From Piromyces finnis finn (taxonomy: Eukaryota; Fungi; Neocallimastigomycota): DNA of 64,000 nucleotides. Each line of letters starts with the position of its first letter. Position 1 is the first letter of the stretch. Below are positions 42,889 through 60,299 of this stretch, one piece after another. Below the pieces are notes generated by a model. It worked only from the letters and a program-made list of their open reading frames with translations. It did not search any database and was not told the origin of the DNA. Both the position numbers and the translations under genes were made by a program. Location of the stretch: assembly GCA_002104945.1 (NCBI GenBank), contig MCFH01000004.1, positions 1,364,001 through 1,428,000 on the forward strand, read 5' to 3'.

Positions 42889-45060
42889 TTAATTCTTACG
42901 AAGGTCATTCCCTATTAAAGAATCAATAGAGAATGCATTTTGAGGGGAAGATGGTGATGGTGGTGGAGTATTTTGAACATTATTCATTAGTTTTTTGTTT
43001 AGGTCATTATGAGTAGAGTTATTAGGTTTAAAATCACTCTGGCTAATACTATATTTAATTTGACGCTTGGAATTATCATTATTCATATAGTAGTTGGTAT
43101 TATTATTATTGTTGTTGTTGTTGTTGGAATTCCAATTGTTCATGTTATTGTAGTTATTACCATTGTTGTTGTTATTATTACCGTTGTTGTCGTTGTTGTT
43201 ACCACTGTAGGTATATTCTTCCACAGAGGATGGGGATTGGAGATAAGAACCATTATTATTGTTATTAGTATCCTTATTCATATTGGAATATTGATTGTTA
43301 TTATTTTGGTAACCATAATTATTATAATTATTTTGTGGTTGTGGTTGTGGATAGCTATTATTTTGAATATCAGGCTTTCTCATCACTGGGCTAGAATAGT
43401 TATTATTATTATTATTATTATTATTATTGCAACTATTCATCATTGGACTATTTACATTGGTATTATTAGAATTATTATTTACATTGGTATTATTATTATT
43501 ATAATTGTTGTTGTTATTATTACATTGATTATTTGAAGAGGAATAATTATTATTTTGAGGATAATAGCTATTATTATTTTGGGAATAATTATTTTGTGGG
43601 AACATAGGTGAGGCATTATAATTATTGTTATCGTTAGAATAGTTTTGGTTATAATTGTTGTTTTGAATTGTTGGGGAATAGTTGTTGTTGTTGTTATAAT
43701 TGTTATTGTTCATTGAATTTGGATTATAATTATTATTTTGATTAGGATTATAATTGTTATTTTGATTAGGATTATAATTGTTATTTTGATTTGGGTTATA
43801 ATTGTTATTTTGATTTGGGTTATAATTGTTATTTTGATTTGGGTTATAATTGTTATTTTGATTAGGATTATAATTGTTATTTTGGTTTGAATTATAATTA
43901 TTGTTCATTTGATTTGGATTTGGATTATAATTATTATTTTGATTCTGTTGGTTTTGAGAATTGTTCATGGTATTGAAATTGTTCATTGGGTAGGTATTTT
44001 GGGAATAGTCATTGTTATTGTTATTATTGTTGTAATTAACTTGGTAATTGTTTTGATCTGGATAGTTATTATTATTGTTGTTGACACCACCGTTCATTTG
44101 ATAGCTATTATTAATATTGTTACCATTGTTATTGTTGTTGTTATTATTCTTAAAATCATTCAAAGGTGGGAGAGGTAAATATTTTGGTTGATTATTATTA
44201 CCATTAACAAAGTTACTTTGTTGTTGTGGTGGGCAAGAACGGTAGTCATTTTGAATATTTTGAGAAATTTTTTGGTAACTTAAACTTCTATCATAATTAC
44301 TTTGGCCATCCATAGAAAATATAGAATTGGAATTATCACTTCCATTTTCATTGTATTTTTCACTATTCTTTTCCATCATTTCATTCCAAACTCTAAATAT
44401 AAATACACTGTTGATTAAGGAAAGATCTTTATCAGCTTGTCTTAATACTTCACTCCATAAATCGCGTATTTGGTCTCTGGTTTTAGATGGGTGCTTTAAA
44501 GTGCGACATATTCTTTCGTGTGTTGGTTTAAGTTCATAATCATCCAAATATTCAAGAACAGAAGCTATTTAAAAAAAAAAAAAACATCAATAAAACGTGT
44601 TTTTTTTTCTTTTTATTTTTATTTTTTCAAATATAAGTGGGGTAGTTCAAACTTACCAGCATCAAGTAAACGATAGACATTACTTCTAGACATTTTCCAT
44701 TTTTCTTTAAAATAAGCAGCTAATGAAGAATGGGTTGCTTTATATAATTTTTTAGATACGATTTCTCTTGTAGTCATAACTATTTGATAAAAATGTTGTT
44801 GTCTTTTATAATATTCAGCCCTATAGTTATTAAAAAGCCGTCCAATAATAAAAAGAATAAAAAAAATTAAATAATTATTATTTTATTATCATTAAAAAGT
44901 TAATTATATCTATAGGGTATAAAGCTATTTACCGTGAAGGAGTCTTAAGTCTACTATGATTAAATGATGTTATATTTATATTTGATTCCACACTTTTTAA
45001 AAGTGCATGTAATTCAGAGTTGGTTGGTTTTTTCTTTTTATTTTCCATTTTAACTTCCAT
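42889..45060 (-). CDS. uncharacterised 655-aa protein: N-terminal bacterial/phage-like helical (HTH-like) domain plus Asn/Gln/Tyr-rich low-complexity region; putative transcription regulator
   Basis: Exons 45060-44933, 44820-44657 and 44564-42889 join in frame with GT-AG introns (1968 nt). Domain reads HFYQIVMTTREIVSKKLYKATHSSLAAYFKEKWKMSRSNVYRLLDAASVLEYL..PTHERICRTL. Product call is inference. Confidence 0.8.
43717..43900 (-). repeat. coding 24-nt tandem repeat encoding (NPNQNNNY)x6 plus flanking variants
   Basis: Units attaggattataattgttattttg and atttgggttataattgttattttg on + strand. Confidence 0.95.
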
Positions 45061-46618
45061 TTTTATATATTATATTTGTTTTATACAAGTAAAACGAAAA
45101 AAAAAAATAAATTTGGTATATACGTTGTATTCGTTTTTTTTTTTCTAAAAAAAATGGTATTTCAAAAAGTCTATTCTATTTTCTTTTATCTATAGGATTT
45201 ATTATTTCTTTTGCTTTTTTTTTTTCTTTTTTGGTAAAGCTTTTGGGTTCAATAATACAATTTCAAATAGTTTCAAAATAAATAAATAAATAAACCAATA
45301 AAGAAAAACATAAAAAAAGTATTCTTTTTCTATATTTTCTACCTATTAAAACTATAAGAAAAATCAAAAATTCAAAAAAAGAAAAAATTTAATGAAAAAA
45401 AATTTTTAAATAATTTAGAGAAAGATCCTTCTTTTTATATTTTTTTTTTTTAAAAAAATAAGTTTATTTATTAGGATATTAAAAATTTTATTAAATTTTA
45501 TTAAAAAAATTTTTTTATTTAAAATTCTAATTTATTAGGCGAAATAAAATAAAATAAATAAATAAAATTTTTTAAATAAATAAATTTGTAGAAGGTGCGT
45601 TGTATACACACTATAATGGTTCAATAAATGAATAATAATTTAATATTTTAATTTTTTTTAATATAAATTGGTAATAATGAATTCAAAACTTTAATAAATA
45701 CTATTTTTATATTGCTCTAAAATAAATAAAAAATTTTATTTCAATTATACAATGTATTGATGAACATGATACTAAATATATTATAATACATTATAATATA
45801 TGAATAATTACTTTAAAAAAAGATATTGTTATACTTTAGATTAAAATTAATTTTATTAATAAATATGGTAGAAACTTTCAACTATTTTTCATTTATTTAT
45901 TATTAAATAAAGTTTTAAACTCGTTTATTGATCTGCTATAATAATATAATTTTGTTATAAATTTTTATCATTAAAAAAAAAACTTTAAAAATGAATATTA
46001 ATTTATATTAATGTTAAACCGTAATAATAGTAATAATATATGAGAATTTTGTTGATATCATTTTATTTTTACCAATACCAATATATATTGTAATATATTT
46101 TAATATAAATAAAATAGAAATAAATTAATTTTTTATTATTTATTATTATTTTTTTAGGCGATTCAAAATGGTATACTTTTTTGTTTCTTAAAAGTTTAAT
46201 ATTATTATTATTATTATTATTATTATTGTAAAAATGAATGGTCTAAAATAAAAATGTATTTGATCTAGAAAGAAAGAAAAAAAAAGAGATAATAAAACAT
46301 CTATTTTAATAATAATAGAATTATAATAAAGTAAGATTATATGATGAAATAGTGTCATACGAATGATTATTCTATAGATTTCTTTCTACCTTTAAATAAA
46401 TACTACTCTACTTTGGTAGTATTAATTACAAAAAATAAATTACTATAATTTCACTGGTAAATCGAATCATTGTTTCAAAAAAAATTAATGTAAAATTATA
46501 TTTTTGTCATTATGGGTGGGGATAAAAAAAGCATCAGGACTTTGTTGGAGATAATGGATAAATAACATATAATAATAAAAATAATAATGATAGTATCTAA
46601 AAATAAATAGTATATATA

Positions 46619-58927: not shown

Positions 58928-60299
58928 CTAATTTCCCCTAATCTTAATGTTATATCCGTTACCGTTTCTTCTGTAGAAGAAACCTCTTGGTGGATCAATT
59001 AAATATACTGGAACTTCTTCAAGACCAGCTTCACGGTAAACCCATAATCTTTTATTGGCGGTAGTGTAATAATTACCGGTGGATTTATCAATACAAACCT
59101 TAATTGGTGGGAAATCTTCAATTTTAATTTCACCATTTCTTAATAATCTCATAGTTCTACGAATAGATCTACCATCTCTAAAGCAGTTATCAATACTTTC
59201 TTGTGAATATAAAATATCTTTTGGATCAAGATAAAGAATTCTATCTTCAGTAAGTTCAATTGGTTCACCATTTAAATAAACAGTAGAAGCAGTATCAGAA
59301 ACCAATGATTCATTATCATCTTCAATATCTAATGATTCAGTAAATGAATCTTCATGATGCCAATTGGAAGTACCATCTTCCCATAAAACAAAGTATGACC
59401 AGTCATTTGCTGGTGATAACCATAATTTCTTTGCACCATCATCACGTCTTTCTAATTCATGATCTAAAGTGGATGGTAAACCATACCAACCATATCTACC
59501 ATCAGTAAATTTAGCATACCATGATCCGTCACCAGAAAGAGCAACTTCTTCAAGATATATATCTTTTTCACTATAATATTTATAGAAACAAAAATAGACG
59601 ATTCTGTTAGTTTTATCTTTACTCTTTAAAATTTTTACATTTTCATTTATAAAAAATAACCCCGACACTATATTTTCTAATATTGATATTTATTTTTTTT
59701 TATAAAATACAATTCTCTTAATCTATTCTATTTAATATAAATTTTAAAAATGAAAAGGTACATACGCTTGACGTTCAATAATTTTTTTATGTAAAAGATA
59801 TGGAATACCATTCCATGCAGTTTCTTTGTTACTAAACATAATAAGGTAAGACTTATCTTGACCAAAAATAACCTTTAAAACACCACGGTGAGCCTTGTCT
59901 TGTAATAAAAGATCCATTTCATCACTGCAAACACTCCAACCAGTAGAGCCATCAGCAAAACGAACGAACCAATCGTCATTTGGTGATAAACTTAAAAATA
60001 CAACTTCAGGTAAAGATCTTTTTTTTAAAATATATATATATATACAAAATATATAAAATTAATAAAAACTGATAAACAATTTAAATAATTTATTGTTATT
60101 ATTATTATTTTAATATATTGTATTTATATATCCTTTGTTTATCGATTTTAATCTTTAGAAATATTTACTTTTGTCTACCGTTTAATTTGTTATGTAAAGA
60201 ATGTGGTAAATTGTTCCATGATTGCCTACCATCACCCCACTTAATATACCAAGCGTTATCACTACCAAAAGCAATAAATTCAACTTCACTTACAGTCAT
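58928..60299 (-). CDS. uncharacterised 341-aa protein: five Trp-rich repeats plus acidic linker plus C-terminal ParB/sulfiredoxin-like domain
   Basis: Exons 60299-60169, 60017-59766 and 59570-58928 join in frame with GT-AG introns (1026 nt). C-terminal LDPKDILYSQESIDNCFRDGRSI..LRNGEI..FPPIKV..YYTTANKRLWVYREAG. Domain call is from motif recognition. Confidence 0.85.

What the first reader, a model, noticed from the sequence alone, without database searches (positions are those of the whole stretch)
44380..45060. Bacterial/phage-like helical domain at the N-terminus of a transcription-factor-like fungal protein
Seen, and mostly hidden from the ORF track by introns: a basic KKKKP patch, then FYQIVMTTREIVSKKLYKATHSSLAAYFKEKWKMSRSNVYRLLDAASVLEYL..PTHERICRTL..QIRDLWSEVLRQA. 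From memory this aligns position by position with an uncharacterised cyanobacterial/phage domain (FYEAGKALxELRDRRLYRSTHxTFEEYCxDRF..R..YRLIDAAxVVDNL..PTSERQVRPL..QRxAWQQAV). That domain is DUF3102-like, HTH-like, and often next to ParB or DNA-methylase domains. Inference: a horizontally acquired DNA-binding module recruited as a eukaryotic transcription regulator outside the standard fungal TF families.
Basis: partly seen in the sequence, partly recalled or inferred. Interest (0 to 1): 0.7.

Follow-up and report, generated by a model that had tools for sequence, protein, structure and literature searches.

The report
Phage-like HTH domain in chytrid-type fungi
A spliced, expressed gene of an anaerobic gut fungus starts with a helical domain clearly related to an unnamed cyanobacterial and phage protein family. 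The same domain defines a large unannotated gene family in all named zoosporic-fungus and aphelid hits, probably DNA-binding regulators.

Summary
A three-exon minus-strand gene (45060..42889, 655 codons) encodes the quoted peptides, and RNA-derived contigs of the same organism show exactly the predicted splicing.

The N-terminal domain of about 115 residues has no Pfam family. It is nonetheless significantly similar to an unnamed family from cyanobacteria and temperate phages:
- BLASTP against a phage protein gives 41% identity and E 2e-19.
- Profile-profile comparison gives 99.5% probability.
- A fungal-only profile finds 4218 database representatives at E<=1e-3.

Models of the fungal and phage domains are confident (pLDDT about 92). 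Their best solved matches are ParB-family HTH DNA-binding domains (Noc, Spo0J, KorB, SopB) and the Raf1 N-domain, at middling scores. DUF3102 is a distant relative at most, and the fungal domain is not a member.

The main correction concerns timing. The gene has about 21 paralogs in this genome. All 23 named eukaryotic hits come from chytrids, Monoblepharidomycota, Blastocladiomycota, Neocallimastigomycota or aphelids. On a tree they form one clan (support 100). Any transfer was therefore ancient, near the base of Fungi.

DNA binding and a regulatory role are inferred, not shown. A first-stage note of this scan (s1-180840) had flagged paralogs of this family elsewhere in the genome.

The parts
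44933..45060 (-). Exon 1 (128 nt). It holds the start codon(s), the KKKKP basic patch and a short conserved helix-like motif that precedes the domain. RNA contigs extend the 5' UTR to 45087.
   Evidence: The ortholog L028 has the same exon 1/2 junction (TPSR|AEYY).
44821..44932 (-). Intron 1 (112 nt, GT..AG).
   Evidence: The joint 44819->44932 is seen in the run X3 contig.
44657..44820 (-). Exon 2 (164 nt). It encodes the first half of the domain: a long helix, the KKLYKATH turn, and the HTH (its first helix, then the SRSNVYRLLDA recognition helix). Net charge is about +7.
   Evidence: It is 49% identical over 45 aa to the phage protein L122 (E 3e-13). hhalign of A1 against the cyanobacterial profile gives 97.5%.
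44565..44656 (-). Intron 2 (92 nt, GT..AG, phase 1). It splits the recognition helix region between LLDA and ASV.
   Evidence: Spliced out in contigs of runs X3 and X4.
44380..44564 (-). Start of exon 3. It encodes the second half of the domain, with the conserved P-x-HER-x-CRTLK, LW-x-VL and INS...VWNE helices.
   Evidence: hhalign of A2 against the cyanobacterial profile gives 86.6%, collinear with the exon 2 match. Model helices lie at 79-130.
42889..44379 (-). Rest of exon 3. It is an Asn/Gln-rich low-complexity tail of about 495 residues that includes an 8-residue NQNNNYNP tandem array. It ends in a conserved C-terminal motif (PPPSP...FSIDSLIGND) and the stop codon at 42889-42891.
   Evidence: No Pfam hit. 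The C-terminal motif is shared with orthologs L026 and L028. RNA contigs reach 42863.

Best explanation
The window holds an expressed, three-exon gene for a 655-residue protein. Its N-terminal domain is all-helical and about 115 residues long. It consists of a long helix, a helix-turn-helix whose half of the domain is strongly basic, and three further helices. The domain is followed by a long Asn-rich disordered tail that ends in a short conserved motif.

The domain is a true homolog of an unnamed family found in cyanobacteria, often in mobile-element-rich regions and on plasmids. That family also occurs in temperate phages, and in one relative it is fused behind DNA methyltransferase domains. 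The predicted fold is the kind used by ParB, KorB, Noc and SopB proteins to read DNA.

In eukaryotes the domain marks a multi-copy family with about 21 loci in this genome. All named members come from zoosporic fungi (Chytridiomycota, Monoblepharidomycota, Neocallimastigomycota, Blastocladiomycota) or aphelids.

The most likely history (inferred) is a single capture of a bacterial or phage HTH module near the base of the fungal lineage. The module then gained introns and disordered tails and expanded by duplication. The most likely function (inferred) is a nuclear, sequence-specific DNA-binding regulator: the HTH recognition helix reads DNA and the tail recruits partners.
For: Gene model and expression
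- Sequence.
- Spliced, mismatch-free RNA contigs of the same organism.
- Spliced orthologous transcripts.

Homology
- BLASTP of the ortholog domain against cyanobacterial L037: 33% identity over 93 aa, E 1e-13.
- BLASTP against phage-contig L122: 41% over 96 aa, E 2e-19.
- Window exon 2 alone against L122: 49% over 45 aa, E 3e-13.
- hhalign, fungal against prokaryotic profiles: 98.9% with E 1.5e-17, and 99.5% with E 3.9e-22.
- Exon-wise profiles align collinearly.
- The fungal-only profile finds 4218 representatives at E<=1e-3 among 1.84 billion proteins.
- The same profile hits 36 of 301 cyanobacterial species genomes.

Phage and mobile context
- L122 carries a terminase, an integrase and a sigma factor.
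- L125 fuses C5 and D12 methylases to the domain.
- Some relatives lie on plasmids, and integrases and transposases are nearby.

Fold
- AF2 pLDDT is 91.7 for the fungal domain and 91.9 for the phage domain, with helices in the same order.
- Fungal model: Noc at Foldseek probability 0.97. VIA-align Z: KorB 6.8, SopB 6.0, Spo0J 6.0, ParB 5.7.
- Phage model: VIA-align Z Spo0J 7.7, ParB 7.5.
- ESM Atlas neighbours are phage, DUF3102, Plasmid_parti_N and HTH_ParB clusters.

Distribution
- About 21 own-genome loci.
- 23 of 23 named eukaryotic hits are zoosporic fungi or aphelids.
- The 106 eukaryotic rows form one clan with SH-aLRT 100.

TF-like traits
- The basic patch, the +7 HTH half and the disordered tail are read directly.
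Against: - No experiment or solved structure shows DNA binding for any member, prokaryotic or fungal.
- Structural Z-scores are middling for helical proteins (5.6-7.7 for ParB-type domains).
- The best Z (7.5 fungal, 9.2 phage) is to the Raf1 N-domain, which binds Rubisco and not DNA.
- The Pfam HMMs for HTH_ParB, DUF3102 and DUF7804 do not detect the fungal domain.
- The tree is unrooted and the fungal stem is long (1.9 changes per site), so the direction and donor of transfer are not shown.
- Only the best 150 of the 4218 hits could be inspected, and 30 of them looked up by name. Members in other eukaryotes cannot be excluded.
- tblastn of the INPHARED phage collection found nothing. The phage link rests on IMG/VR contigs.
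Confidence: 0.6

Rival explanations
1. The domain is a protein-protein interaction or chaperone-like module, as in the N-terminal alpha-domain of Rubisco accumulation factor Raf1. It is not a DNA reader. The fungal proteins would then be scaffolds or adaptors.
For: The Raf1 N-domain is the top VIA-align match for both models: Z 7.5 over 101 residues for the fungal model and Z 9.2 over 123 residues for the phage homolog. It is also the top Foldseek match for the phage model, at E 1e-2. Raf1 is itself cyanobacterial, as are most prokaryotic relatives.
Against: - No Raf1 family appeared in the Pfam scans of the fungal or cyanobacterial proteins.
- The Raf1 beta-domain is absent.
- These fungi have no Rubisco (established knowledge).
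- One prokaryotic relative is fused to DNA methyltransferases, and another sits in a phage regulatory region next to a sigma factor and an integrase. That fits DNA targeting.
- The HTH half carries about +7 net charge and an SR-x-x-VYR helix start like ParB-type HTHs.
Confidence: 0.15
2. No prokaryote-to-fungus transfer took place. Either the domain is ancient and was vertically inherited in eukaryotes, or it moved from an early fungus into cyanobacteria and phages.
For: The tree has no root. The fungal clan and the prokaryotic set are simply two sides of one long branch. The fungal family is old, diverse and intron-rich.
Against: - On the eukaryotic side, only zoosporic fungi and aphelids were seen among the 23 named hits.
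- The prokaryotic side is large and architecturally varied, with stand-alone proteins, methylase fusions, plasmid copies and phage copies.
- Its more distant kin by fold and profile (DUF3102, HTH_ParB, Plasmid_parti_N) are prokaryotic, plasmid or phage families.
Confidence: 0.15
3. The gene is a recent horizontal acquisition by anaerobic gut fungi from rumen bacteria or their phages, or it is bacterial contamination of the assembly.
For: Anaerobic gut fungi are known for many bacterial gene acquisitions (established knowledge). The window gene is the fungal member most similar to prokaryotic sequences, with the shortest branch to the clan base.
Against: - The gene has two spliceosomal introns, about 20% GC like its surroundings, and an Asn-rich tail.
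- Spliced transcripts exist.
- Homologs in chytrids, Gonapodya, Allomyces and aphelids form one clan with it.
- The stem to the prokaryotes is long.
Confidence: 0.03
4. The family is carried by, or derived from, a eukaryotic mobile element. The window gene would then be a domesticated or still selfish copy rather than a host regulator.
For: One paralog subfamily sits in copies that are 95-99.9% identical over at least 2.5-3 kb, clustered on three contigs. Prokaryotic relatives live on mobile elements.
Against: - The window gene is single-copy in the genome.
- It has near-identical domains in expressed orthologs of other anaerobic fungi, with diverged tails. That is the pattern of a host gene under purifying selection on the domain.
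- No transposase or integrase domain was found in the protein.
Confidence: 0.07

Closest known systems
Unnamed cyanobacterial/phage family (consensus FYxAGxAL..RLYRxTH..F.xYC..RF.F.R..Y.LI.AA.V..NL..LPTSERQxRPL..Q..AW..AV). Part of some members is covered by Pfam DUF7804 (PF25089).
   Same: Significant, collinear sequence similarity over the whole domain (33-41% pairwise identity; hhalign 98.9-99.5%). The predicted helices come in the same order, and the LY-x-x-TH, SR-x-x-Y-R-L-I/L-D-A, P-T-x-E-R-x-C-R-x-L and W-x-x-V motifs are shared.
   Different: - Prokaryotic members are 200-400 residues long, intronless, and carry a different C-terminal domain. One is fused behind DNA methylase domains.
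- Fungal members carry long low-complexity tails and introns, and form a separate clan on a long branch.
- The PF25089 HMM does not detect the fungal domain.
ParB-family central HTH DNA-binding domain (Spo0J/ParB, Noc, KorB, SopB, VirB; Pfam HTH_ParB PF17762)
   Same: The arrangement of an HTH inside a helical bundle is similar. Foldseek gives probability 0.97-1.0 and TM about 0.55. VIA-align Z is 5.6-6.8 for the fungal model and 7.5-7.7 for the phage model, over about 90-125 residues. The recognition helix starts with an SR-x-x-V motif.
   Different: There is no sequence-level match. The fungal protein has no N-terminal ParB/Srx CTPase domain and no C-terminal dimerisation domain. Z-scores are in the range where helical folds can match by arrangement alone.
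DUF3102 (PF11300), an uncharacterised bacterial/phage/plasmid HTH-like family
   Same: The fold class is the same by ESM Atlas (TM 0.57-0.60) and by embedding neighbours. The cyanobacterial profile aligns to the HTH of a DUF3102 protein at 83% probability, E 9e-6. In one cyanobacterium the two genes are divergent neighbours.
   Different: The PF11300 HMM finds nothing in this genome or in the spliced orthologs. The fungal profile against the DUF3102 protein gives only 11% probability. DUF3102 has ...HGxF..WL... where this family has LYRxTH..F..YC.
Fungal APSES/SBF transcription factors derived from the viral KilA-N domain
   Same: The evolutionary scenario is the same: a DNA-binding module of viral or bacterial origin captured early in the fungal lineage and turned into a multi-copy regulator family (Medina et al., eLife 2016, PMC4862756, found).
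   Different: The fold is unrelated (KilA-N is alpha/beta). APSES factors are retained in Dikarya and are experimentally proven transcription factors. Among the named hits, this family is seen only in zoosporic fungi and aphelids, and its function is untested.
Raf1 (Rubisco accumulation factor 1) N-terminal alpha-domain
   Same: It is the best VIA-align match for both models (Z 7.5 and 9.2) and covers nearly the whole domain.
   Different: Sequence identity is 8-17%, and no Raf1 family appeared in the Pfam scans. Raf1 has a C-terminal beta-domain and binds RbcL. These fungi lack Rubisco (established knowledge).

Membership tests
Unnamed cyanobacterial/phage HTH-like family (A5/A6) | Significant sequence similarity to family members and profiles | tested here: met
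   - BLASTP E 1e-13 and 2e-19.
- hhalign 98.9% and 99.5%.
- The fungal-only HMM scores cyanobacterial and phage proteins at up to 54 bits.
Unnamed cyanobacterial/phage HTH-like family (A5/A6) | Collinear match over the whole domain, shown for the window's own exons | tested here: met
   The exon 2 profile aligns to A5 columns 52-98 (97.5%). The exon 3 profile aligns to columns 112-148 (86.6%). Window exon 2 against L122 gives E 3e-13.
Unnamed cyanobacterial/phage HTH-like family (A5/A6) | Same predicted fold | tested here: inconclusive
   Both AF2 models are confident (pLDDT 91.7 and 91.9), have the same order of helices, and match the same set of PDB entries. No direct superposition tool was available.
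DUF3102 (PF11300) | Match to the Pfam HMM above the gathering score | tested here: not met
   No match in the own genome at E<=10. No match on exon pieces or on spliced ortholog domains.
DUF3102 (PF11300) | Remote profile similarity to a bona fide member | tested here: inconclusive
   The cyanobacterial profile against DUF3102 protein L136 gives 83% and E 9e-6 over 58 HTH columns. The fungal profile gives 11%.
ParB-family HTH DNA-binding domain (PF17762) | Match to the HTH_ParB HMM | tested here: not met
   No match in the own genome, while 11 of 14 control genomes ring. No match on spliced orthologs.
ParB-family HTH DNA-binding domain (PF17762) | ParB-type HTH-in-helical-bundle fold | tested here: inconclusive
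   Hits to Noc, KorB, SopB, Spo0J, ParB and VirB are consistent, but Z is only 4.1-7.7 and TM about 0.55.
ParB-family HTH DNA-binding domain (PF17762) | N-terminal ParB/Srx CTP-binding domain in the same protein | tested here: not met
   Only about 45 residues precede the domain, and no Pfam hit was found anywhere in the protein.
ParB-family HTH DNA-binding domain (PF17762) | Sequence-specific DNA binding | not testable with these tools
   Needs EMSA, PBM or DAP-seq.
Standard fungal TF families (Zn2Cys6, C2H2, bZIP, bHLH, homeodomain, APSES and others) | A Pfam DNA-binding domain of one of these families | tested here: not met
   No Pfam family is above cut-off on any exon or on full spliced orthologs. 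Only sub-threshold HTH_32 and HTH_7 touches fall on the HTH.
Raf1 N-terminal domain | Raf1 sequence families and the C-terminal beta-domain | tested here: not met
   No Raf1 Pfam family appeared. Only the fold matches. The C-terminus is a low-complexity tail.

The most novel reading that the evidence does not exclude
This would be a previously undescribed, lineage-defining family of DNA-binding regulators. An HTH module of the ParB/DUF3102 fold class was captured once from a bacterium or phage by the common ancestor of aphelids and Fungi. It expanded to tens of copies per genome in flagellated lineages and was lost, or diverged beyond recognition, in terrestrial fungi. That would make it a second case, after KilA-N/APSES, of a mobile-element DNA reader built into early fungal gene regulation. 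It could be tied to zoospore biology. Because one prokaryotic relative is fused to a Dam-type methylase, it could also be tied to the 6mA-rich chromatin of early-diverging fungi. Both links are speculation.
Probability: 0.35. Interest if true: 0.8.

Novelty: new variant of a known kind. Interest (0 to 1): 0.62.

Why it matters
Transcription-factor catalogues of fungi are built from Pfam DNA-binding domains, and this domain has none. A family with about 21 loci here, and many per chytrid genome, is therefore invisible to them. If it binds DNA, it adds a regulator class to the least understood fungal phyla. It would also give a second dated example of a mobile-element DNA-binding module captured at the root of Fungi. 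Finally, it gives a first functional handle on a large cyanobacterial and phage family that is currently annotated only as hypothetical. The phyletic pattern, present in flagellated lineages and unseen so far in Dikarya, is directly testable with public genomes.

Tried and rejected
- Exon-by-exon scans of the window pieces against Pfam, NCBIfam and PHROGs gave only noise.
- The word-index protein search with exon 3 found nothing.
- tblastn of single exons, of the full ortholog domain and of the cyanobacterial domain against the INPHARED phage collection found nothing significant.
- The pattern scan of IMG/VR with the fungal exon 2 alignment found nothing. Two alignments were too variable for the pattern scan.
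- PDB sequence searches with the fungal and cyanobacterial profiles gave no relative.
- The PF11300, PF17762, PF25089 and PF02086 HMMs gave no hit in the own genome.
- The intended Pseudomonadota sample turned out to be the same phylum as the cyanobacterial one. Other bacterial phyla were therefore not sampled, and their absence is not claimed.
- Paper searches for DUF7804, a chytrid locus tag, DUF3102 and chytrid/ParB/HGT terms found no description of the family.
- Contamination and recent-HGT readings were rejected on introns, base composition, spliced RNA and phylogeny.
- The window's own joined three-exon protein was never assembled or sent to a tool. Natural spliced orthologous transcripts, by reference, stood in for it.
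- No complex prediction was run, because no binding claim is made.
Full report
GENE MODEL

The window is about 15-30% GC throughout. It belongs to a 56.46-Mb assembly of 232 contigs, which fits an anaerobic gut fungus. My own recollection that these figures fit Piromyces finnis was not checked.

On the minus strand a gene runs from the ATG at 45060 to the stop at 42889-42891. It has three exons: 45060..44933, 44820..44657 and 44564..42889. Both introns are GT..AG, and the coding sequence is 655 codons.

RNA-derived contigs from runs of the same organism confirm the model. One 1029-nt contig lies on 43855-44564, 44657-44819 and 44932-45087 without a mismatch. A second run confirms intron 2. Further contigs cover the tail down to 42863.

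I searched them by reference, piece by piece. For whole-domain work I used natural spliced transcripts of orthologs found in JGI metatranscriptomes (L026-L028). Their open frames carry the same two junctions. Their domain differs from the window's at three positions of exon 3 and none of exon 2.

A FAMILY IN THIS GENOME AND IN ZOOSPORIC FUNGI

Exon-level searches of the assembly find about 21 loci. Their motifs are strongly conserved (alignments A1 and A2). Intron positions vary between paralogs, and one paralog is intronless and internally shortened.

I built a profile from eight spliced fungal domains only (A4). Against 1.84 billion cluster representatives it gave these counts:

| E-value threshold | Proteins |
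|---|---|
| <=1e-3 | 4218 |
| <=1e-10 | 248 |
| <=1e-30 | 49 |

The best 150 all look eukaryotic, being long proteins rich in S, P, Q or N. I looked up 30 of them. All 23 that carry a name are hypothetical proteins of zoosporic fungi or aphelids:
- Neocallimastix
- Chytrids: Spizellomyces, Borealophlyctis, Quaeritorhiza, Chytriomyces, Cladochytrium, Nowakowskiella, Terramyces, Phlyctochytrium, Chytridium, Blyttiomyces and a Chytridiales species
- Gonapodya
- Allomyces and Sorochytrium
- The aphelids Amoeboaphelidium and Paraphelidium

No Dikarya or zygomycete name appeared. That is absence among those sampled, not proof of absence.

THE PROKARYOTIC RELATIVES ARE REAL

The metagenome scan also returned a 37%-GC bacterial contig (L037). 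Its 286-residue protein aligns to the fungal domain at 33% identity over 93 residues, with pairwise E 1e-13.

Its relatives are cyanobacterial hypothetical proteins from Xenococcus, Gloeothece, Prochloraceae and others. At least 450 loci occur in species-representative genomes, and nearly all of the 80 kept are Nostocales or Pleurocapsales. Several are on plasmids.

Profile-profile comparison supports homology:
- Fungal A4 against cyanobacterial A5: 98.9% probability, E 1.5e-17, over 107 columns.
- Fungal A4 against the broader set A6: 99.5% probability, E 3.9e-22.
- Window-led exon profiles align collinearly: exon 2 at 97.5% to columns 52-98, exon 3 at 86.6% to columns 112-148.

The fungal-only profile hits 36 of 301 sampled cyanobacterial genomes at per-genome E<=1e-3. 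Prokaryotic and phage proteins score 13-54 bits with that profile. By extrapolation from the listed scores, roughly 34-58 bits spans E 1e-3 to 1e-10 in the big search. Most of the roughly 4000 unlisted hits are therefore probably this prokaryotic family, but that is an inference.

PHAGE AND MOBILE-ELEMENT CONTEXT

IMG/VR holds at least eight relatives.

L122 is a 55%-GC contig with a terminase, an integrase and a sigma factor. It encodes the closest prokaryotic-side relative seen: 41% identity over 96 residues, E 2e-19. Window exon 2 alone matches it at 49% over 45 residues, E 3e-13.

L125 places the domain behind a C5 methylase and a D12 (Dam-type) methylase in one 1159-residue frame. L118 places it at the end of a 1036-residue frame that has no Pfam hit.

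Cyanobacterial copies sit among integrases, transposases, group II introns and NACHT-type genes. I saw no ParB neighbour. The curated INPHARED phage set gave no tblastn hit.

FOLD

AlphaFold2 models are confident for both the fungal domain (pLDDT 91.7) and the phage homolog (pLDDT 91.9). Both show the same order of helices, seven in all.

Structure searches return a consistent but middling set. Z values are from VIA-align 2; Foldseek probability and TM are given separately.

| Solved match | Fungal model | Phage model |
|---|---|---|
| Raf1 N-domain | Z 7.5 | Z 9.2 |
| Spo0J | Z 6.0 | Z 7.7 |
| ParB (Caulobacter) | Z 5.7 | Z 7.5 |
| KorB | Z 6.8 | Z 5.7 |
| SopB | Z 6.0 | Z 6.2 |
| Noc | Foldseek prob 0.97, TM 0.55 | Foldseek prob 1.0, TM 0.54-0.56 |

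ESM Atlas neighbours by shape and by embedding are phage clusters (TM 0.73), small proteins named as DNA methylases, DUF3102, Plasmid_parti_N and HTH_ParB.

At the sequence level the picture is different:
- The PF11300, PF17762 and PF25089 HMMs do not see the fungal domain.
- The cyanobacterial profile reaches a bona fide DUF3102 protein at 83% probability over the HTH. The fungal profile reaches only 11%.

"DUF3102-like, ParB-HTH-like" is therefore fair as a description of fold class and distant kinship. It is not membership.

ORIGIN

On a maximum-likelihood tree of 152 domains, all 106 eukaryotic rows lie on one side of a branch, with SH-aLRT 100. The stem is long, at 1.9 changes per site. 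The window's ortholog is the eukaryotic row nearest the base.

Three things follow:
- One clan, members in four zoosporic fungal phyla and the aphelids, and variable intron positions together rule out a recent rumen-type HGT and contamination.
- The direction of transfer cannot be read from an unrooted tree.
- I nevertheless infer prokaryote or phage to early fungus. Eukaryotic hits named so far are confined to zoosporic fungi and aphelids, the prokaryotic side is broad and architecturally varied, and all more distant kin are prokaryotic mobile-element families.

MECHANISM (INFERRED)

The exon 2 half holds the HTH and carries about +7 net charge. The recognition helix starts with SR-x-x-VYR, as in ParB-type HTHs. 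A basic patch sits at the N-terminus.

The rest of the protein is an Asn-rich disordered tail ending in a motif conserved among orthologs (PPPSP...FSIDSLIGND).

This is the layout of a eukaryotic sequence-specific regulator. No tool here can show DNA binding. The Raf1-like protein-binding reading remains a live rival.

NOVELTY

No paper in the searchable library mentions the family, DUF7804 or the chytrid homolog. DUF3102 itself is uncharacterised in the three papers that name it.

The closest conceptual precedent is the capture of the KilA-N domain as the fungal APSES/SBF factors (PMC4862756).

A first-stage note of this scan (s1-180840) had already flagged a four-copy paralog with the same kind of N-terminus. 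The four C190 loci are hits to my profile.

Noticed in passing
window 58928-59668 (-): A 246-residue open frame has Trp-rich repeats followed by a ParB/Srx-like C-terminal region. It lies about 14 kb from the HTH gene. Earlier notes s1-185693 and s1-185977 describe it. In bacteria ParB/Srx and the ParB HTH sit in one protein; here they would be separate genes.
   Followed up: no
L015-L021 (G000 contigs C208, C115, C190): One paralog subfamily of short proteins (about 300-330 residues) lies in copies that are 95-99.9% identical over at least 2.5-3 kb. The copies are clustered in both orientations on three contigs. This is either a recent segmental duplication or a mobile unit.
   Followed up: partly
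L012:1357-1680 (G000:C183:189452-189766): An intronless paralog (= P0128, 330 aa) has the KLYK...EEYF helix region shortened by about 12 residues. The fungal profile still recognises it at E 1.6e-21.
   Followed up: partly
window 43700-43900 (-): A tandem array of a 24-nt unit encodes NQNNNYNP about eight times inside the Asn-rich tail. RNA contigs break or mis-join around the low-complexity stretches, and orthologs differ greatly in tail length.
   Followed up: no
window 42892-42980 (-); L026 and L028 C-termini: A short C-terminal motif (NTPPPSP...FSIDSLIGND) is conserved among orthologs, although the tails are otherwise diverged. It is a candidate partner-binding linear motif.
   Followed up: no
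L136:216-1923: In one cyanobacterial genome a bona fide DUF3102 gene (41.9 bits) and a member of the family studied here are divergent immediate neighbours.
   Followed up: partly
L125:2397-5873: An IMG/VR contig encodes one 1159-residue frame that fuses a C5 cytosine methylase, a D12 Dam-type adenine methylase and the HTH-like domain.
   Followed up: partly
L002-L010 (own-genome paralogs): Intron positions inside the domain differ between paralogs. Some have a phase-1 intron after LLDA. Others have an intron after ISRA, one has an extra intron after SHER, and one has none. This suggests long residence and repeated intron gain or loss.
   Followed up: partly
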